From the IMG/VR virus record IMGVR_UViG_3300032287_004484, positions 62,001 through 126,000 of that record: DNA of 64,000 nt, one strand, 5' to 3'. Below are positions 50,541 through 64,000 of the stretch, one piece after another; the first letter of the stretch is position 1, and every line of letters begins with the position of its first letter. Below the pieces are notes generated by a model. That model was not told the DNA's origin. It did no database searches and was given only the letters and a program-made list of their open reading frames with translations. Made by a program: the position numbers and the translations under genes.

Positions 50541-50969
50541 TTACAAAATAAATGAAAGAACGTTATCTTCCTCATCTAAATAGGTAGATAACGGAAACTC
50601 ATTTGTTTTTTCATCTATAAGAATATCGTTATTACAAATTAAAATTGCATCTGGCCAATCATTATGTTCTTCTCTTAAAAAATCTAAGAATTTTTCTAGG
50701 TCATAAACTGTTAATATTTTATCTTCCTCAAATCCAGTTGAGTCAAATAATAGAAGATTTTCTTTTTCATCATATTCTATTGAATTTACGTCAAATTGTA
50801 ATTCTGTATCATCACTTATTTGAATTGAATATTCAAGTTTTGTATCTTTCCAATTATCATAATTTTCTTTACAAAAATTAATCATTTGTTGAATTTCATT
50901 ACATTTCAAATAAGGCGTCATATCACTCATTATTTCATTTAATAAATCTTTAAAGAAATCTTCTTCCAT
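50541..50969 (-). CDS. very acidic hypothetical protein with internal duplication
   Basis: About 38 D/E vs about 10 K/R in 142 aa (hand count); AGGAGA RBS. Confidence 0.75.
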   Translation of the reverse strand: MEEDFFKDLLNEIMSDMTPYLKCNEIQQMINFCKENYDNWKDTKLEYSIQISDDTELQFDVNSIEYDEKENLLLFDSTGFEEDKILTVYDLEKFLDFLREEHNDWPDAILICNNDILIDEKTNEFPLSTYLDEEDNVLSFIL

Positions 50970-51053
50970 TTTATTTCTCCTAATAAAATATCTTTATGTT
51001 ATATTTAAAATTACTTCTATACTTTATTGATTGTATAGTTTAAAGTGATATTT

Positions 51054-51091
51054 TTTTGGGTTTAAACACTTAATACAAAAAATAGTAGTAT
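51054..51091 (+). promoter_or_regulatory. promoter for sRNA unit 1 (TTTTGGGTT-TAAACA-N17-TAGTAT)
   Basis: -35 at 51063-51068, -10 at 51086-51091. Confidence 0.7.
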
Positions 51092-51097
51092 ATATTA

Positions 51098-51194
51098 TAG
51101 AAAAGAAAAAATAATAAAAGCAATTCTAATTTTTAATTTCGTCTCCAGTAAAATTCCTAGTCCACTCTAAGAAATTAGAGTGGATATTTTTTTT
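51098..51194 (+). ncRNA. putative small RNA 1
   Basis: Promoter, A-rich leader, conserved 30-nt core 51120-51149, terminator; no start codon; 5' end inferred from promoter position. Confidence 0.65.
51161..51194 (+). terminator. intrinsic terminator
   Basis: tccactctaa-GAAA-ttagagtgga followed by ta and T8. Confidence 0.9.
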
Positions 51195-51208
51195 ATCTAA
51201 AGATTTTC

Positions 51209-51246
51209 TTTTAGGTTTATACATCTAGTATAATAAATAGTAAAGT
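51209..51246 (+). promoter_or_regulatory. promoter for sRNA unit 2 (TTTTAGGTT-TATACA-N17-TAAAGT)
   Basis: -35 at 51218-51223, exactly 155 bp after the previous copy. Confidence 0.7.
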
Positions 51247-51252
51247 AGTTAT

Positions 51253-51349
51253 ATAATAAAAAAAAACGCAATTCTAATTTACAATTTTGTCTCCAGTTTA
51301 AATTTAAGTTTTTAGATCCACCCTGAGAAATCAGGGTGGATATTTTTTT
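51253..51349 (+). ncRNA. putative small RNA 2
   Basis: Core 51268-51297 is 27/30 identical to unit 1; same architecture and length. Confidence 0.65.
51316..51349 (+). terminator. intrinsic terminator
   Basis: atccaccctga-GAAA-tcagggtggat followed by a and T7. Confidence 0.9.
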
Positions 51350-51363
51350 ATTTAACGGTCTAT

Positions 51364-51401
51364 TTTTAGGTTTATACATTAAATTTACAAAATAATATAA
51401 T
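51364..51401 (+). promoter_or_regulatory. promoter TTTTAGGTT-TATACA-N17-TATAAT for 51433 onward
   Basis: -35 at 51373-51378, again 155 bp after the previous copy. Confidence 0.8.
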
Positions 51402-51432
51402 AGAAAGAAATAAATATAGAAAAATATATAAT

Positions 51433-51771
51433 ATGGAAGAAGAAGAAAAAAGTAATTCTTTTGGATTAGAAGGAAATCAAGAAAGATATGATGATAATGT
51501 TGATAAATTTCTTAAAAGAATACAAGATTTTAAAAAAAATCACTGGAACTCCGTAGATCATATTGTAGATGTTTCTATTACAAATTTTATTTTATTAGAA
51601 CATTTTTTAACTATTATTATTTCAAAAGTAGTAGAAATTCAAAATAGAGGAGATTCTTCTTTTAATAAAGAAGAAAAAATAGAGGAAGTATTTGAAAACT
51701 TATTAAGTGCTTTTTCTATCTATAAAGAAGATTTATTAGAGATATTAGCTAAAAATAGAGATGAGGAGTGA
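51433..51771 (+). CDS. hypothetical protein
   Basis: 112-aa ORF downstream of a promoter. Confidence 0.7.
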   Translation: MEEEEKSNSFGLEGNQERYDDNVDKFLKRIQDFKKNHWNSVDHIVDVSITNFILLEHFLTIIISKVVEIQNRGDSSFNKEEKIEEVFENLLSAFSIYKEDLLEILAKNRDEE

Positions 51772-58396: not shown

Positions 58397-58762
58397 TTAA
58401 ATTCCTCGCTCAGAAGAATTTATTATTTTTCCATTACAACTAAAGAAGTTTTCGGTAAATTTTAAGACTAAATTAGGATCATATTCTGCACAAGAAAAAA
58501 CATCTAAATATATTTCTCCAATATTTTCAGCAAAGTGTGCTGTTATAGAACTTGTTTCTATTGCTTGTAATACTGTTATTCCATATAATTTTTCATCATG
58601 AGAAGCAAATTTTTCTATCCATGTATTTCCGTACATTTTCATTTGAATTTCATCACATAATTCTTTAATAAATATTTTAACAGTTTCTGGATCACTTATT
58701 TTTTCTTTATTAGCGCTTTTAAAATCAAAAGCACAAGATAGTCCCCAAGCATTTTTATTCAT
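58397..58762 (-). CDS. SAM-decarboxylase-family pyruvoyl proenzyme, divergent ETS type
   Basis: GITVLQAIETSSITAHF..YLDVFSC..ERG. Confidence 0.85.
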   Translation of the reverse strand: MNKNAWGLSCAFDFKSANKEKISDPETVKIFIKELCDEIQMKMYGNTWIEKFASHDEKLYGITVLQAIETSSITAHFAENIGEIYLDVFSCAEYDPNLVLKFTENFFSCNGKIINSSERGI

Positions 58763-59123
58763 CTAGAGTTCCTCTATTTATTTTAATTATTCTTTTTTCT
58801 TTTGGTTTTAAAACTCTTACTATAAAATCCATTCCTACTTCTGGTTTACAAGTATTTCCACAAGTAAAAATATCAAAATGCCCATAACCAAATTCTGGAT
58901 ATGTATGTACTGAACAATGTGATTCTGATAATATCCAAACTCCAGTTACTCCTTGCGGATCAAATTTATGTTCAACATATTTAAGCGGAGTTGCTCCAGT
59001 TTCAATGGAAGCTAATCTTAATAATTCTTTTATTTTTTCTGGATCATCTAATATATTATTTTGACAATCCCATAAATCAGCTACAATATGTTCTCCATTT
59101 ACAAGGTATTCTTCCTTTTCCAA
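58755..59123 (-). CDS. speD: S-adenosylmethionine decarboxylase proenzyme, canonical ESH type
   Basis: GEHIVADL, HKFDPQGVTG..LSESHCSVHTYPE..DIFTCG; TTG start. Confidence 0.92.
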   Translation of the reverse strand: MEKEEYLVNGEHIVADLWDCQNNILDDPEKIKELLRLASIETGATPLKYVEHKFDPQGVTGVWILSESHCSVHTYPEFGYGHFDIFTCGNTCKPEVGMDFIVRVLKPKEKRIIKINRGTLDE

Positions 59124-59376: not shown

Positions 59377-59916
59377 TTATTTTTTACATTCCTTTTTTAA
59401 AATATTATTATAAGAATTATTCTCTATATCAGATATTTTTAACTGATATTTATTAATAATTTTTATAAAAGATGTAATATATAAACATTTATTAAAAGGT
59501 GGCATCCATTTATCTGGTCCTTTAGAACCTTTAGACCTATTCATTTTAATAGATAAAGGAACTAAATGATTTTCATCTACATAATTATTGGCATAACTAT
59601 TTTTTTGTTTTTTAGTCCATTTATCCGCTCCATGATCATATGCCCATTTTAATGGTACAGTATGATCAATATCTATATCACTTGGATTAGAAAAATATTT
59701 ATCTTCCCAAATAGAATACCATTCGCCACTAAGGATAGTGCAATTTTTAGAATCAAGAGTAATTATATCTCTAGTTTTAATTATTAAAATATGCTCTCTA
59801 GTAGTAATACAGCCTTTATAAGTATTCCAACCTTCTCCAAAAAGATTTCTATCATATTTATCTTGAGAAGATAAATTAGTTAGTATTATAAGAAAAATAA
59901 ATATTATTTTTTTCAT
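59377..59916 (-). CDS. secreted DUF1524/HNH-type nuclease
   Basis: Signal peptide MKKIIFIFLIILTNLSS; DIDHTVPL..A..HGA..W, NRSKGSKGPDKWMPP; ATG at 59916 preferred over the track start at 59934. Confidence 0.85.
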   Translation of the reverse strand: MKKIIFIFLIILTNLSSQDKYDRNLFGEGWNTYKGCITTREHILIIKTRDIITLDSKNCTILSGEWYSIWEDKYFSNPSDIDIDHTVPLKWAYDHGADKWTKKQKNSYANNYVDENHLVPLSIKMNRSKGSKGPDKWMPPFNKCLYITSFIKIINKYQLKISDIENNSYNNILKKECKK

Positions 59917-59924
59917 TTTATGTC

Positions 59925-61133
59925 CTATGTCCATTGTTTTTGTTTAATATTATCGCCATATAATACTTTAGATTCACTAGGCATAGTATTTCCTTCAACA
60001 AAATCTTTACAAAAAGAAACCCAATCATGTGCAGTATTTACAGGAACGTTTTGAAAAACAGCGTTATAATAATCATTTTGTAGATTAAAATCATTTGGTA
60101 AACCCATAAAAATCATGTGTTCTCTTACAGATAAATAGCGATCTTCAGTTGGATGAAGCATATTAGGAGCTCTCATTGTGATTGCATTAAATGGAATTCC
60201 ATCTCGATAAAAATGAGAAGAAGCGTTCCACCAACCTTTTCCAAGAGACATTTTATATTTAGCATACTCAATATGTTTAATGTGTTTTTCATTTTTGATA
60301 GGATCTTCATTTTTTAAAAACTCAATAAAATCATCTTGAAGATTCATTTGAAATAAGAAATACTCAATAGAAACTGATTTTGGTAATTCTTTATATTTTG
60401 CTAACATTTCTGTTCGCCATTCTTTTCCAAATTTCTGAGAACAGTATTTATAGTAATTTGTTTCAGTAAAAATATCTTTTAAAATACATTTTTGGTGTTC
60501 AGGAGTATCTTTATAAGAATTATATTGTTCTTGTAGTATTTCTTTTGGCGACAAATGAGGTTTATTAAACCATTTAAAATTTGGAGCAAATTCTGAATCC
60601 CAAAAGAAAACAAAAGATCTTTTTCTATTTTGAGGTAATCCATGTAAACTAGAAGTTGTAAATACAAAAGAAATACTATATCCATGTTTTTGTCCAATAC
60701 TTATAGCTTGTTCACGAACCCAACTTCCAAAGTTTTGCATTAAACCAGGTGCATTTTCAAAAATCATTACTTTTGGTTTTATATCTCTTAAAACAAGAGA
60801 AGAAGTTAAATACATCCACATATTTGATTTATAATCATGTTCAGCATTAGCTGTTTTATTACTTATAGTTGGATTAAGACGAGATAATCCAGCACAAGGT
60901 GGAACAGCACTTACAATCATAGTATTTTTAAAAATATCGTCATTAAGACCTATAGAATCTAAATTATCATTATCAAGAGTTCTAAACGGAACTCCTTTGA
61001 AATAATTTTTAAAATTTTGTTCATTAGTTGCAAATCCATCCCAAGATACAGCCCAACTAGGATCTTCACCTAAAGCTTTTGTGGCTCCTAAAGCCATACC
61101 ACCAATTAGTGGTATTATTGTTCCATGTTTCAT
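59925..61133 (-). CDS. DNA (cytosine-5) methyltransferase
   Basis: Variant motif I IPLIGG, PPCAGLS, FENAPGL, PQNRKR, RYLSVRE, QNVPV. Confidence 0.9.
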   Translation of the reverse strand: MKHGTIIPLIGGMALGATKALGEDPSWAVSWDGFATNEQNFKNYFKGVPFRTLDNDNLDSIGLNDDIFKNTMIVSAVPPCAGLSRLNPTISNKTANAEHDYKSNMWMYLTSSLVLRDIKPKVMIFENAPGLMQNFGSWVREQAISIGQKHGYSISFVFTTSSLHGLPQNRKRSFVFFWDSEFAPNFKWFNKPHLSPKEILQEQYNSYKDTPEHQKCILKDIFTETNYYKYCSQKFGKEWRTEMLAKYKELPKSVSIEYFLFQMNLQDDFIEFLKNEDPIKNEKHIKHIEYAKYKMSLGKGWWNASSHFYRDGIPFNAITMRAPNMLHPTEDRYLSVREHMIFMGLPNDFNLQNDYYNAVFQNVPVNTAHDWVSFCKDFVEGNTMPSESKVLYGDNIKQKQWT

Positions 61134-61144
61134 TTATAAAATCC

Positions 61145-62254
61145 TTATAAAATTTTAGTTATAGATAATTTTATTTCTTCTTGTGAACATTTTATGTATT
61201 TATCAATTAAATTGTTCAAAAAATTATCATCTATATTTCTATTACTAATTTCAAAAGAATCATCAATTAATAATTTATCTAAATCGCTTTTATCTTTAAT
61301 ACCTTCTTCAACATACACTGAATTATGTATAAATGGTATTACTCCTCTTGTTAGGGCTTCTATAAAGCGAGGAGAAAAAGCATTTTTATCATAACCTGGA
61401 AGTATTAAAGTATATTTAGATTTTTTTAGATATTCAATATATTCTTCTTTAGTAATGTTAGTAAAAATATTTTTATATTTATCTTGTAAAAATATATTAC
61501 TATTTTGTAAAGAATAAAATTTATCGTATAATTTTTGAACATACTTTCTATCTGGAGTTAAACAAGTAAATCCAATACACCAATCATGTTCTTTTTTATT
61601 ATCTAATTCAAGATGTTCTGAGTGATAAATTTTAATAAAAGGATGTTGTTGAGTTTTAAAAAGTTTAGAATCATAAATAAAAAATCTACGATAATCTAAT
61701 TCTTTCACTAAATCTACATCACTATGATTACTTTCTTGTGGATCATGTAAGAAATGATTCCAAGGTATGTTAAAAGTTTTTACAAAACTATAATGATTAA
61801 TAAATTTTTGAGTTGTTTTGCGAGTGCTCATAAAATTAATAAATTTATTTTCTTTAATTCCTTTATTTAAAAAATTAGGTTTATAGTATTTTACTCCACT
61901 GCTCATAATACCAAAAACTTCTACAAAAGACACTGGATCTATTATTCCTTTTAATTTTTGGTATCCTTCCATACATTCAGAAATAAATTTATCCCAAGTT
62001 GTGATTTCTTTTTTTTCATTCATAATGAAACAATCAAAAATACTATTAAGATATTTATCGTGATTTTTAACATGATTAAAGTTTTCAAAATCTGATATAA
62101 GCGCAATATTATATTGATCTTTAAATTTTGTTAACCAATAAGTATAAGTTATATATGAATGTTTTGATGCGTTCCTTAAATTAAAGGGTGCGCCAAAACC
62201 AACTACAATAGTTTTTTTATTTTGATTAAAAGAATTCTTTTTCTCAAATCTCAT
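61145..62254 (-). CDS. GT-B glycosyltransferase, possibly DNA-modifying
   Basis: EYIEYLKKSKYTLILPGYD..FSPRFIEAL..GVIPF C-terminal GT-B motif; next to the MTase. Confidence 0.7.
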   Translation of the reverse strand: MRFEKKNSFNQNKKTIVVGFGAPFNLRNASKHSYITYTYWLTKFKDQYNIALISDFENFNHVKNHDKYLNSIFDCFIMNEKKEITTWDKFISECMEGYQKLKGIIDPVSFVEVFGIMSSGVKYYKPNFLNKGIKENKFINFMSTRKTTQKFINHYSFVKTFNIPWNHFLHDPQESNHSDVDLVKELDYRRFFIYDSKLFKTQQHPFIKIYHSEHLELDNKKEHDWCIGFTCLTPDRKYVQKLYDKFYSLQNSNIFLQDKYKNIFTNITKEEYIEYLKKSKYTLILPGYDKNAFSPRFIEALTRGVIPFIHNSVYVEEGIKDKSDLDKLLIDDSFEISNRNIDDNFLNNLIDKYIKCSQEEIKLSITKIL

Positions 62255-63246
62255 TCTTTATTTTCCTTATTAAATTGTTTTTCAATCCATTTAAAAGTTT
62301 TTTTCATTCCATCTTCTAATTTAGTTGAAGGTTCCCAATTTAATAATTCTTTAATTAAAGTATTATCACTATTACGACTCTTAACACCTTGTGGAGCACT
62401 AACATTATAAATATAAGTTGAATCTATAATATCAGTTTTAGAAATTTTCATTGCTAAATCATGCAAATATTGAATAGTAACTCCTTGACTAGAACCTAAA
62501 TTAACTGGACCTTGAATTTTATTATTTATTAATTTATGTATTCCAACAATTGCATCTTCTATGTACATAAAAGATCTTCGTTGTTTACCATCTCCCCAAA
62601 TTTCAACATGATCTTTTTTCATATTAATATATTCAATAATTTTTCTAATTGAAGCAGCTGGAGCTTTTTCTTTTCCATCTTTCCAAGATCCATGAGGTCC
62701 ATAAACATTATGAAAACGAGCAATCGTAACTGGAACTCCAAATTCTTTATTAAGATAACGATAAAGTTCTTCACAATATAATTTATTTAATCCATACATT
62801 AAATCAGGATGTGCTGGCCACGCATCACTTTCTTTTAACATAATATCTTTAGAATCATCAGTTTGAAGAGAATCGTTATAGACACAAGCAGATGAAGAGA
62901 AAAAAACATGTGGCTTATTCTCACTTTTTAAAATACTTTCTATTAAATTAATATGAATCTTTCCTGATAATCCAGTTAAAAGATGATTATGTTCGCAATA
63001 TCCGATTCCACCCATATCCTCAGCTAGGTTATAAATAATATTAACACCTTGAGTAACTGAGTCAGTAATTTGAGGATTGACCATATCTCCTTTTTTACCA
63101 TGATAATTATCAGCTTCTTTAAATCTTTGATACCATTCATTTTTTGGTTTTTTATCATAAGCTTTAACTTCGTAACCTAAATCTAGACAGCTTTTAACAA
63201 GATGTCCACCTATAAATCCACCTGCTCCGCAAACAGAAACTTTCAT
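62251..63246 (-). CDS. NAD-dependent sugar epimerase, GDP-mannose 3,5-epimerase-like
   Basis: GAGGFIG, LAEDMGGIGY, SSSACVY, YGLNK, RFHNVYGP.G.W..GKEKAPAA, GVKSRNSDNTLI. Confidence 0.88.
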   Translation of the reverse strand: MKVSVCGAGGFIGGHLVKSCLDLGYEVKAYDKKPKNEWYQRFKEADNYHGKKGDMVNPQITDSVTQGVNIIYNLAEDMGGIGYCEHNHLLTGLSGKIHINLIESILKSENKPHVFFSSSACVYNDSLQTDDSKDIMLKESDAWPAHPDLMYGLNKLYCEELYRYLNKEFGVPVTIARFHNVYGPHGSWKDGKEKAPAASIRKIIEYINMKKDHVEIWGDGKQRRSFMYIEDAIVGIHKLINNKIQGPVNLGSSQGVTIQYLHDLAMKISKTDIIDSTYIYNVSAPQGVKSRNSDNTLIKELLNWEPSTKLEDGMKKTFKWIEKQFNKENKE

Positions 63247-63329
63247 TTTTTCTCCTTATATTTCGTAAAAGTTATCACTATATTAAATAATTTTATTAAT
63301 ACTTTTTTCTTATGTTTATCTTTTTCATA

Positions 63330-63593
63330 TTATAATTTAGTTTTTTTTGAATTAAAAAAAGCACTAGACGTTGAATTAGAAGCGCTACTATTATAAGTTG
63401 GACTTGATGTAAATATATTATCAACATTTAAAAAAGGTTGTGAGGTTCCAGTATATGTACTTTTATTATTAACATATTGATCAACATAAGGCACTATTGG
63501 TTTTTCTTCTTCTACTAAAATACAAAATTCATCAACATTTATTAATTCATCTTTGAATAATTTAAGAAGAATTTTAATTTTTTCTTTATTCAT
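63330..63593 (-). CDS. small hypothetical protein
   Basis: 87-aa ORF overlapping the upstream gene. Confidence 0.6.
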   Translation of the reverse strand: MNKEKIKILLKLFKDELINVDEFCILVEEEKPIVPYVDQYVNNKSTYTGTSQPFLNVDNIFTSSPTYNSSASNSTSSAFFNSKKTKL

Positions 63594-64000
63594 GTTTTTT
63601 CATCTCATTATTATAATATAAATATTTTATTTTAGTTATTTCTGGTAATAAATCGTGAATTGATTCTTTTTCTAGTTTGATAGTATTCTCATATCCCCAA
63701 ACTTCATTTTTTAAATCTTTAATTAAATCATGTTCATTTCTTTGCTGATGAACCGTAATTTTATTAAAAATTATTTTTTGTCTTAAATTAACAAGATTTT
63801 GTAATAAGTATGCTCCCCATATATCATCATATCTTCCAATATTACATAACATCATATATTTAGATATAAGACTTCTATGAATAAAAGTATTCTGAGAATT
63901 AAATGGAGTGAATTGATATGTTGTAAAAGGTCCATCATAAAAAGAATCGTATTCATTATATTTCCAATCAGGAGAATTAGATAATCTACAGATTGCCGAT
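63586..64000 (-). CDS. C-terminal part of an RGP/STELLO-like (GT75-related) glycosyltransferase or mutase, truncated by the window edge
   Basis: Frame is open beyond the track start to the edge: SAICRL..PFNSQNTF..GRYDDIW..HQQRNEHDLIKDL. Confidence 0.75.
   Translation of the reverse strand, partial: SAICRLSNSPDWKYNEYDSFYDGPFTTYQFTPFNSQNTFIHRSLISKYMMLCNIGRYDDIWGAYLLQNLVNLRQKIIFNKITVHQQRNEHDLIKDLKNEVWGYENTIKLEKESIHDLLPEITKIKYLYYNNEMKKHE

What the first reader, a model, noticed from the sequence alone, without database searches (positions are those of the whole stretch)
59925..64000. C5-MTase + GT-B + GDP-mannose 3,5-epimerase-like + RGP/STELLO-like cluster: candidate DNA hypermodification with an unusual sugar
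Seen: these genes are co-oriented; epimerase and GT-B overlap by 4 bp, and GT-B and MTase are 11 bp apart. Established: some phages hypermodify cytosine post-replicatively via C5-MTase, TET/JBP oxidation and a glycosyltransferase; GDP-mannose 3,5-epimerases make GDP-L-galactose/L-gulose; RGP (GT75) proteins are UDP-arabinopyranose mutases. Inference: the phage makes its own rare nucleotide sugar for transfer to modified cytosine. No TET/JBP or dCMP hydroxymethylase is visible in the window, so it lies outside, the chemistry differs, or the sugar goes to protein rather than DNA.
Basis: partly seen in the sequence, partly recalled or inferred. Interest (0 to 1): 0.75.

Follow-up and report, generated by a model that had tools for sequence, protein, structure and literature searches.

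The report
Phage DNA sugar-modification gene cluster
A 290-kb freshwater phage carries a gene island that most likely makes its own rare sugars and attaches them to hydroxymethylated cytosines in its DNA, together with an odd cytosine-methylase-like enzyme whose role in such systems is unexplained.

Summary
On the minus strand lie a C5-MTase-like gene, a GT-B glycosyltransferase 11 bp away, a GDP-mannose 3,5-epimerase overlapping it by 4 bp, and a GT75 (RGP/STELLO-like) gene that runs off the window. The window is part of a complete 290-kb freshwater jumbo phage. The island continues about 12 kb further: a second GT-B, NT5C, RmlA/B/C, an acyltransferase, a GT2, a HAD-nucleotidyltransferase and a methyltransferase.

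No TET/JBP was detected in the genome. About 11 kb before the window there is a ThyA homologue with the T4 gp42 signature (dCMP hydroxymethylase), plus ThyX and a dNMP kinase.

Evidence for a DNA target:
- T4 beta-glucosyltransferase is the best structural match of the GT-B.
- In Pseudoalteromonas phage XG4, homologues of both GT-Bs and the MTase sit between gp42-like and gp56-like genes.
- Of 34 non-redundant loci with this MTase subfamily, 25 have a DNA-GT-like gene or a dCMP hydroxymethylase nearby, against 0 of 16 generic MTase loci.

The epimerase plus the GT75 mutase mirror MtdM/MtdL, which make GDP-L-galactofuranose.

Best reading (about 0.6): pre-replicative 5hmC, then glycosylation with phage-made sugars. 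This is a new variant of a known kind. The MTase-like enzyme's role is open.

The parts
59377..59934 (-). 185-aa HNH-type nuclease (GmrSD C-terminal domain-like). It overlaps the MTase gene by 10 bp.
   Evidence: PF07510 GmrSD_C, E 2e-5. It is present in the relatives L010, L011, L017 and L018, but there small ORFs separate it from the MTase. Whether it belongs to the module is uncertain.
59925..61133 (-). 402-aa C5-cytosine-DNA-methyltransferase-like protein of a distinct phage subfamily.
   Evidence: PF00145, E 5e-20. Motif IV PPCAG, ENAP, QNRKR and QNVPVNT are present. Across 30-32 homologues the invariant residues are the catalytic Cys, ENAP, QxRxR and PLxGG in place of FxGxG. The subfamily sits next to GTs and dCMP hydroxymethylases in phage contigs.
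61145..62254 (-). 369-aa GT-B glycosyltransferase ('GT369'), candidate DNA (5hmC) glycosyltransferase.
62251..63246 (-). 331-aa GDP-mannose 3,5-epimerase (GME).
   Evidence: PDB 2c59, E 1e-73, 251 bits. The equivalents of C145, Y174, K178 and K217 are conserved in the printed alignment. phrog_540, E 2e-60.
63330..63593 (-). 87-aa ORF of unknown function between the epimerase and the mutase.
   Evidence: No family hit. A weakly similar small ORF sits at the same place in relatives, E 1e-6 to 2e-8.
63586..64000 (-). C-terminal part of a 323-aa GT75 NDP-pyranose mutase-like protein. The gene continues to window-equivalent 64557, genome 126557.
   Evidence: Best PDB match is MtdL (7yua/7xpr), E 1.2e-15. 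DDDN, RGFP, GDPD, NSQNT, RxxD and HxxRxxH are conserved; MtdL D87 is Ile here (residue roles from PMC9937993).

Best explanation
The four genes are the window-side end of a roughly 16-kb island that most likely decorates the phage's own DNA with sugars.

Step 1 (inferred from signature residues). A ThyA homologue outside the window turns dCMP into 5-hydroxymethyl-dCMP. A phage dNMP kinase phosphorylates it on the way to the triphosphate, and replication puts 5hmC into the DNA. ThyX supplies dTMP.

Step 2 (inferred from close similarity to characterised enzymes). The phage makes its own sugar donors. The GDP-mannose 3,5-epimerase converts host GDP-mannose to GDP-L-galactose (or L-gulose). The adjacent GT75 mutase contracts the ring to an L-hexofuranose donor, as MtdM and MtdL do for GDP-L-galactofuranose in A201A biosynthesis. 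RmlA, RmlB and, in this genome, RmlC start a second, 6-deoxyhexose donor whose last step is not identified.

Step 3 (inferred from fold and gene context). Two GT-B enzymes, the 369-aa one in the window and a 430-aa one just beyond it, transfer these sugars to the hydroxyl of 5hmC in DNA after replication. This shields the genome from restriction and CRISPR nucleases.

The C5-MTase-like protein belongs to the same module by strong gene-context evidence. Its chemistry is not known.
For: Evidence that 5hmC is made:
- The genome has both ThyX and a divergent ThyA homologue (88 bits).
- The ThyA homologue's best PDB match is the CMP hydroxymethylase MilA (2.4e-25).
- It carries Asp/Cys/Asp/Asp at E. 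coli L143/C146/D169/N177, exactly as T4 gp42 does. The criteria come from PMC13326640.
- A dNMP kinase (phrog_139) and a dCMP deaminase are present.

Evidence for the sugar donors:
- GME, E 1e-73, with catalytic residues kept.
- GT75 mutase with the MtdL catalytic, Mn and diphosphate residues kept (PMC9937993).
- RmlA 2.5e-52, RmlB 2e-61, RmlC 1e-39.

Evidence that the acceptor is DNA:
- The GT430 family matches T4 BGT by hhalign, probability 85.6%, E 5.6e-6.
- In Pseudoalteromonas phage XG4 the order is gp42-like, NTP-transferase, GT430-like, GT369-like, MTase-like, gp56-like.
- In contig L014 a GT369 homologue sits with an AGT-like GT, the MTase subfamily, RmlD and RmlA.
- 25 of 34 non-redundant MTase-subfamily loci have a DNA-GT-like gene or a dCMP hydroxymethylase within the fetched flanks (up to 10 kb), against 0 of 16 generic C5-MTase loci, p 8e-7.
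- All 19 linked ThyA homologues have the 5hmC signature.
- All 4 complete records with the MTase have a ThyA homologue.
- GME and the mutase lie between the two GT-Bs, whose homologues are directly adjacent in XG4.
- An NT5C deoxyribonucleotidase lies inside the island.

Precedents: GT+epimerase pairs and ThyS+GT-B clusters glycosylate 5hmC (10.1101/2023.12.21.572611). Phage-made furanose donors are used on DNA (PMC13326640).
Against: - Nothing shows the DNA is modified. All evidence is fold, signature residues and gene neighbourhood.
- No T4 gp56-type dCTPase and no MazG was found, only a dUTPase-family protein. Full replacement of C is therefore not assured.
- The dCMP hydroxymethylase is 70 kb from the island.
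- The island is large and looks like a glycan-building locus: four GT-type genes, an acyltransferase, an SH3 protein and a class-I methyltransferase.
- The mutase's closest isolate homologue lies in a cyanophage S-T4 sugar island with heptose and fucosyltransferase genes. That locus shows no DNA-modification gene.
- There is no RmlD, so the second donor is undefined.
- The loci used for the association are not phylogenetically independent.
Confidence: 0.6

Rival explanations
1. The island builds a glycan for something other than DNA. Candidates are virion proteins, as in mycobacteriophages and giant viruses, or the host cell surface, as in superinfection exclusion and the LPS-like islands of cyanophages. 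On this reading the MTase is a bystander.
For: - The island holds many GT-type genes, RmlA/B/C, a PlsC-like acyltransferase, an SH3_3 protein, a GT2, a HAD-nucleotidyltransferase and Methyltransf_11.
- It abuts the terminase and baseplate genes.
- The GT75 homologue in cyanophage S-T4 lies in a sugar island with heptose and fucosyltransferase genes.
- The GT369 family gives weak GT47 or CgeB-like hits.
- About 65% of phage GT contigs in Pyle et al. have no base-modification neighbour.
Against: - Homologues of both GT-Bs lie between gp42-like and gp56-like genes in XG4.
- T4 BGT is the top structural match and GT430 matches BGT by profile.
- A DNA-MTase-like gene is conserved directly next to GTs across diverged loci.
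- NT5C lies inside the island.
- A part of the island that varies between relatives (RmlC, the acyltransferase, and perhaps the plus-strand genes beyond them, whose presence in relatives was not checked) could still serve a non-DNA target.
Confidence: 0.22
2. The MTase makes 5mC in DNA, a TET/JBP-type oxidase turns it into 5hmC, and the GT glycosylates it. All steps are post-replicative.
For: C5-MT + 5mYOX + GT(+epimerase) clusters are experimentally established in phages (PMC8256090; 10.1101/2023.12.21.572611). The MTase keeps its catalytic Cys, ENV-like and QxRxR motifs.
Against: - No Tet_JBP match at E <= 1 in the complete genome.
- None in 22 records with the same MTase subfamily (no positive control).
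- A gp42-type dCMP hydroxymethylase is present instead and is the regular companion of this MTase subfamily.
Confidence: 0.04
3. The MTase-like gene is an ordinary orphan (or HNH-paired) C5 methylase. It would serve anti-restriction or act on whatever unmodified cytosine remains. It would sit among DNA-metabolism genes without taking part in glycosylation.
For: - All base-contacting catalytic motifs are intact.
- No gp56-type dCTPase was found, so some C may persist.
- An HNH nuclease gene overlaps it by 10 bp.
Against: - The subfamily is directly adjacent to a GT in many diverged loci, and generic MTase loci show no such neighbours.
- It co-occurs with 5hmC synthases, including in XG4, which also has a gp56-like dCTPase.
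- Motif I is invariantly PLxGG rather than FxGxG.
- The HNH is separated from it by extra ORFs in relatives.
Confidence: 0.3

Closest known systems
T4-type pre-replicative 5hmC pathway with DNA glucosyltransferases (gp42, gp1, gp56, alpha-/beta-GT)
   Same: - A ThyA-family dCMP hydroxymethylase with the same diagnostic residues.
- A dNMP kinase.
- GT-B enzymes whose best structural or profile match is T4 BGT.
   Different: - No gp56-type dCTPase was detected.
- The donor is not host UDP-glucose but phage-made sugars.
- The hydroxymethylase is 70 kb from the GTs.
- A C5-MTase-like gene is part of the module.
Phage MT + 5mYOX(TET) + GT (+ epimerase) biosynthetic gene clusters (Burke et al. 2021, PMC8256090; Pyle et al. 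2023, 10.1101/2023.12.21.572611)
   Same: A C5-MT next to a GT, with an epimerase paired with the GT. In those clusters GT activity depends on the partner epimerase.
   Different: - No TET/5mYOX was detected.
- 5hmC most likely comes from a ThyS-type enzyme.
- The epimerase is a GDP-mannose 3,5-epimerase coupled to a GT75 mutase.
5-hydroxycytosine arabinosylation and hexosylation clusters of RB69, DLP3 and RL38J1 (Lee et al. 2026, PMC13326640)
   Same: A ThyA homologue, several GT-Bs and phage-encoded nucleotide-sugar synthesis. The donors are furanoses, and RL38J1 has an NDP-sugar mutase.
   Different: - The ThyA homologue keeps Asp at the D169 position, so 5hmC is predicted, not 5hoC.
- The mutase is the Mn-dependent GT75 type, not the FAD-dependent UGM.
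- The sugar would be an L-hexose.
MtdM/MtdL of A201A biosynthesis and Hyg20 of hygromycin A (GDP-L-galactose or GDP-L-fucose pyranose-furanose mutases, GT75)
   Same: A GDP-mannose 3,5-epimerase next to a GT75 mutase. Mutase residues D109, D111, N112, R159, S228, Q229, R257, D260, H287, R289 and H292 are conserved.
   Different: - Only distant sequence similarity (E 1e-15, 216 of 323 residues aligned).
- MtdL D87 is Ile here.
- The setting is a phage rather than an actinomycete antibiotic cluster.
- Nucleotide specificity was not tested.

Membership tests
T4-type (ThyS-dependent) 5hmC DNA glycosylation system | A dCMP hydroxymethylase: a ThyA homologue with the catalytic Cys, N177D, L143D/E and D169 retained. 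| tested here: met
   Alignment A1 with T4 gp42 shows D141, C144, D167 and D175 invariant. MilA is the best PDB match. Criteria come from PMC13326640. The gene lies outside the window at genome 50735-51589.
T4-type (ThyS-dependent) 5hmC DNA glycosylation system | A dNMP kinase able to phosphorylate the modified nucleotide. | tested here: inconclusive
   A phrog_139 deoxynucleoside monophosphate kinase, E 3e-22, is present at genome 57398-57925. Its substrate range was not tested.
T4-type (ThyS-dependent) 5hmC DNA glycosylation system | A dCTPase that removes dCTP from the pool. | tested here: not met
   No T4 gp56 homologue by phmmer against all ORFs and no MazG. A 164-aa dUTPase-family protein exists and might do the job, but this is untested.
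T4-type (ThyS-dependent) 5hmC DNA glycosylation system | A glycosyltransferase acting on 5hmC in DNA. | not testable with these tools
   Fold and context point that way: T4 BGT is the top structural match, GT430 matches BGT by hhalign, and the XG4 gene order agrees. Activity needs an assay.
MT + TET/5mYOX + GT post-replicative hypermodification cluster | A TET/JBP (5mYOX) dioxygenase. | tested here: not met
   PF12851 gave no match at E <= 1 in the complete genome. It gave 0 of 22 related records, but no positive control rang in that search.
C5-cytosine DNA methyltransferase (PF00145) | Catalytic motifs IV (PC), VI (ENV), VIII (QxRxR) and X. | tested here: met
   PPCAG, ENAP, QNRKR and QNVPVNT are present, and these are invariant in 30-32 subfamily members.
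C5-cytosine DNA methyltransferase (PF00145) | The canonical AdoMet-binding motif I, FxGxG. | tested here: not met
   The subfamily has an invariant PLxGG, with Leu at the first Gly position, in the alignment to 3g7u and in A5/A7. The canonical motif is from my own knowledge. Cofactor binding itself was not tested.
GDP-mannose 3,5-epimerase | Close full-length similarity, plus the SDR Tyr/Lys and the acid/base Cys145 and Lys217. | tested here: met
   2c59, E 1e-73, over residues 1-329. SSAC, YxxxK and EKAP are conserved in the printed alignment. The residue roles are from my own knowledge of Major et al. 2005.
GT75 NDP-pyranose mutase (MtdL/Hyg20/plant UAM) | The DXD motif, the catalytic Arg159, the Mn-binding His287, and the sugar and diphosphate contacts. 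| tested here: met
   DDDN, RGFP, NSQNT, RYDD and HqqRneH are conserved, and only D87 differs (Ile) (PMC9937993). Whether it acts as a mutase or a transferase, and on GDP or UDP, is not testable here.
dTDP-L-rhamnose pathway (RmlABCD) | All four enzymes, including the 4-reductase RmlD. | tested here: not met
   RmlA, RmlB and RmlC are each the best NCBIfam hit but fall below the curated cut-offs. PF04321 finds only a sub-threshold match inside RmlB. The relative L010 has no RmlC or acyltransferase next to RmlB.

The most novel reading that the evidence does not exclude
The C5-MTase-like subfamily has an invariant catalytic Cys, ENAP and QxRxR, but PLxGG instead of FxGxG. It always travels with 5hm-dCMP synthases and DNA glycosyltransferases. 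On this reading it is not a methylase of cytosine at all. It would be an enzyme that works on 5hmC in DNA, for instance by attacking C6 to activate the 5-hydroxymethyl group for exchange or transfer, or by flipping the base for the neighbouring GT. The product in this phage would be a so far unseen L-hexofuranosyl (L-galactofuranosyl-type) 5hmC.
Probability: 0.15. Interest if true: 0.85.

Novelty: new variant of a known kind. Interest (0 to 1): 0.62.

Why it matters
Phage DNA glycosylation blocks restriction enzymes and CRISPR nucleases, and it has supplied tools for epigenome sequencing.

If the reading is right, this phage would add a new sugar chemistry to DNA: an L-hexofuranose made by a GME plus GT75 mutase pair known until now from actinomycete antibiotics.

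The work also exposes a widespread, unstudied pairing. A C5-methyltransferase-like enzyme occurs together with pre-replicative 5hmC synthesis, where a C5 methylase should have no substrate. Explaining that pairing could reveal a new DNA-modifying reaction. All the proposals are directly testable by heterologous expression.

Tried and rejected
- megablast of the region against phage records found nothing.
- A single-protein pattern scan of viral contigs with GT369 found nothing. It succeeded only after homologues were gathered.
- The first AF2 model of GT369, from 9 close sequences, was poor (pLDDT 57.6). It was replaced by a model from 71 sequences.
- Foldseek against the PDB gave only a generic GT-B ranking.
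- GT369 against T4 BGT by hhalign was not significant.
- Complex prediction of GT369 with the MTase-like protein returned 'no answer' and is not used as evidence. Those were left out.
- pI values did not discriminate.
- The genome search could not reach the 327-kb relative's contig, so its ThyA status is unknown.
- No Pfam, NCBIfam or PHROG hit was found for the 87-, 116- and 233-aa ORFs of the island.
- Literature searches found no paper describing this MTase subfamily with dCMP hydroxymethylases.
- Read laying was not used, because short-read contigs cannot show base modification.

Full report
**Observation.** All lie on the minus strand:
- 59925-61133 (402 aa)
- 61145-62254 (369 aa), 11 bp from the first
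- 62251-63246 (331 aa), overlapping the second by 4 bp
- an ORF that runs off the window end

The window is bases 62001-126000 of a 290,274-bp IMG/VR virus record with direct terminal repeats, rated 100% complete. Its GC content is 25.6%. Runs that hold this stretch are freshwater and lake metagenomes. The large terminase is only 25-30% identical to those of T4-like cyanophages and of an uncultured huge phage.

**What the four genes are.**
- The 402-aa protein matches PF00145 (E 5e-20). It has PPCAG, ENAP, QNRKR and QNVPVNT motifs.
- The 331-aa protein is a true GDP-mannose 3,5-epimerase. Arabidopsis GME 2c59 matches at E 1e-73, against 5e-22 for the next SDR. The equivalents of Cys145, Tyr174, Lys178 and Lys217 are kept.
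- The ORF that leaves the window is 323 aa. Its best solved relative is MtdL (E 1.2e-15). MtdL is the Mn-dependent GT75 mutase that converts GDP-L-galactopyranose to the furanose in A201A biosynthesis (PMC9937993).
- The phage GT75 protein keeps the MtdL residues for Mn, diphosphate and sugar binding: D109, D111, N112, R159, S228, Q229, R257, D260, H287, R289 and H292. Only D87 differs, being Ile here.
- The 369-aa protein has no significant Pfam hit. A 71-sequence alignment gives an AF2 model with pLDDT 92.9 and a GT-B fold.

**The island is larger than the window.** Downstream on the same strand lie:
- a 430-aa protein with GT-B-like neighbours
- an NT5C deoxyribonucleotidase
- RmlA (2.5e-52), RmlB (2e-61) and RmlC (1e-39)
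- a PlsC-like acyltransferase

On the other strand follow a GT2, a HAD-nucleotidyltransferase fusion and a class-I methyltransferase. No RmlD was found.

The core order is kept in four related contigs with about 70% protein identity: RmlB, RmlA, NT5C, GT430, mutase, GME, GT369, MTase, HNH, two AdoMetDC genes, TerL. RmlC and the acyltransferase are not next to RmlB in one of them.

**Where the hydroxyl comes from.**
- No Tet_JBP match was found in the complete genome.
- The genome has ThyX and also a divergent ThyA homologue at 50735-51589.
- The best solved relative of that ThyA homologue is the CMP hydroxymethylase MilA.
- Lee et al. 2026 give three criteria: N177D means a cytosine substrate, L143D/E means hydroxymethyl rather than methyl, and D169N means 5-hydroxycytosine.
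- This protein has Asp, Asp and retained Asp at those positions, identical to T4 gp42. It is therefore a predicted 5hm-dCMP synthase.
- A dNMP kinase, a dCMP deaminase and a dUTPase-family protein are present.
- A gp56-type or MazG dCTPase was not found.

**Is DNA the acceptor?** Three independent lines point that way.

2. *An isolate.* In Pseudoalteromonas phage vB_Psh_XG4 the gene order is:
   - gp42-like dCMP hydroxymethylase (3e-65)
   - nucleotidyltransferase fusion
   - GT430-like
   - GT369-like
   - MTase-like
   - gp56-like dCTPase (9e-43)

3. *The MTase subfamily.* A pattern scan found 45 viral loci with full-length homologues at 27-70% identity.
   - After collapsing near-duplicates there are 34 loci. 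Of these, 19 have a DNA-GT-like gene, 14 a dCMP hydroxymethylase and 25 at least one of the two, within the fetched flanks of up to 10 kb.
   - None of 16 loci with generic C5-MTases has either (Fisher p 8e-7).
   - The MTase is often directly next to the GT.
   - All 19 linked ThyA homologues carry the 5hmC signature.
   - All four complete records have a ThyA homologue.
   - No TET was seen in 22 records, though that search had no positive control.
   - Contig L014 combines a GT369 homologue, an AGT-like GT (PF11440), a radical-SAM enzyme, the MTase subfamily (34% identity, E 5e-71), RmlD and RmlA.

The loci are related phages and many are fragments, so these counts show a recurring association, not independent events.

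**Proposed mechanism.**
- 5hm-dCMP is made before replication and incorporated into DNA.
- GME and the GT75 mutase lie between the two GT-B genes, whose homologues are directly adjacent in XG4. They would make an L-hexofuranose GDP-sugar from host GDP-mannose.
- RmlA, RmlB and RmlC start a 6-deoxyhexose donor.
- GT369 and GT430 put one or both sugars on 5hmC.
- Every step is inferred; none is shown. The sugar identity is the weakest part, because D87 is changed, RmlD is missing and nucleotide specificity is unknown.

**The MTase-like protein.** It belongs to the module by context, but a C5 methylase has no free C5 on 5hmC. Its catalytic Cys, ENAP and QxRxR are invariant. Motif I is invariantly PLxGG rather than FxGxG. 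Three readings remain open:
- an ordinary methylase acting on residual cytosine
- an enzyme working on 5hmC
- a partner of the GTs

A co-folding test with GT369 gave no answer.

**Rival.** The size and content of the island, and the cyanophage S-T4 island that holds the closest isolate homologue of the mutase, keep a non-DNA glycan (virion or cell surface) alive at about 0.2. This applies above all to the part that varies between relatives: RmlC, the acyltransferase, and possibly the plus-strand genes beyond them, which were not looked for in relatives.

**Comparison with what is known.**
- ThyS+GT-B clusters, MT+TET+GT clusters and GT+epimerase pairs that glycosylate 5hmC are described (PMC8256090; 10.1101/2023.12.21.572611).
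- Phage-made furanose donors on cytosine are described (PMC13326640).
- New here are the GME+GT75 donor route, the C5-MT-like subfamily tied to ThyS-type 5hmC without TET, and the scale of the island.

This is a new variant of a known kind.

Noticed in passing
window 58397-59123 (-): Two tandem AdoMet_dc (PF02675) ORFs of 121 and 122 aa (E 8e-16 and 5e-34) lie just downstream of the HNH and MTase genes. The pair is conserved in all close relatives. It may be an AdoMet decarboxylase plus a neofunctionalised amino-acid decarboxylase (polyamine synthesis). A link to DNA modification was not tested.
   Followed up: partly
window 59377-59934 (-): A GmrSD_C/HNH-like 185-aa nuclease overlaps the MTase stop by 10 bp. 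In relatives two or three small ORFs are inserted between the two genes. It could be a nuclease for unmodified DNA or a homing endonuclease.
   Followed up: partly
genome 50735-57925 (outside the window, about 4-11 kb before its start; L004, L005): A nucleotide-metabolism block holds a split or partial DNA polymerase ORF, the dCMP hydroxymethylase, a sigma-factor-like protein, a DnaB-like fragment, ThyX and a dNMP kinase.
   Followed up: partly
L002 9789-12497 (+) = genome 133789-136497: The sugar island continues on the plus strand with a GT2 (211 aa), a HAD (beta-PGM-like) + nucleotidyltransferase fusion (457 aa) and a Methyltransf_11 protein (233 aa).
   Followed up: partly
L019 9968-12404, L020 and L047 (IMG/VR contigs): These loci have two tandem copies of the MTase-like gene. 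The copies are flanked by a HAD phosphatase, a large nucleotidyltransferase, an AGT-like GT, a second GT-B, a DXD GT-A and a dCMP hydroxymethylase.
   Followed up: partly
L014 3263-4321 (+): A radical-SAM/SPASM enzyme sits between the GT369 homologue and the AGT-like GT in an 8.6-kb contig that also has the MTase subfamily, RmlD and RmlA.
   Followed up: no
L078 (cyanophage S-TIM54; also S-TIM5, S-TIM61 and S-TIM66): Cultured Aurunvirus cyanophages carry the MTase subfamily 2 kb from a 'ThyA' that has the cytosine-hydroxymethylase residues. This suggests 5hmC-type DNA in these isolates.
   Followed up: partly
L006 (Synechococcus phage S-T4, record 68086-86910): A 46%-identical homologue of the GT75 mutase lies in a sugar island with UDP-glucose 4-epimerase, heptose-pathway genes, a cytidylyltransferase and two fucosyltransferase-like genes.
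   Followed up: no
L021 12334-13971 (+); L010 17239-18414 (-): L021 has a family-B DNA polymerase fragment with an intein next to an MTase/GT430 pair. In the 327-kb relative L010, a NUMOD3 (homing-endonuclease-like) ORF sits beside the terminase gene.
   Followed up: no
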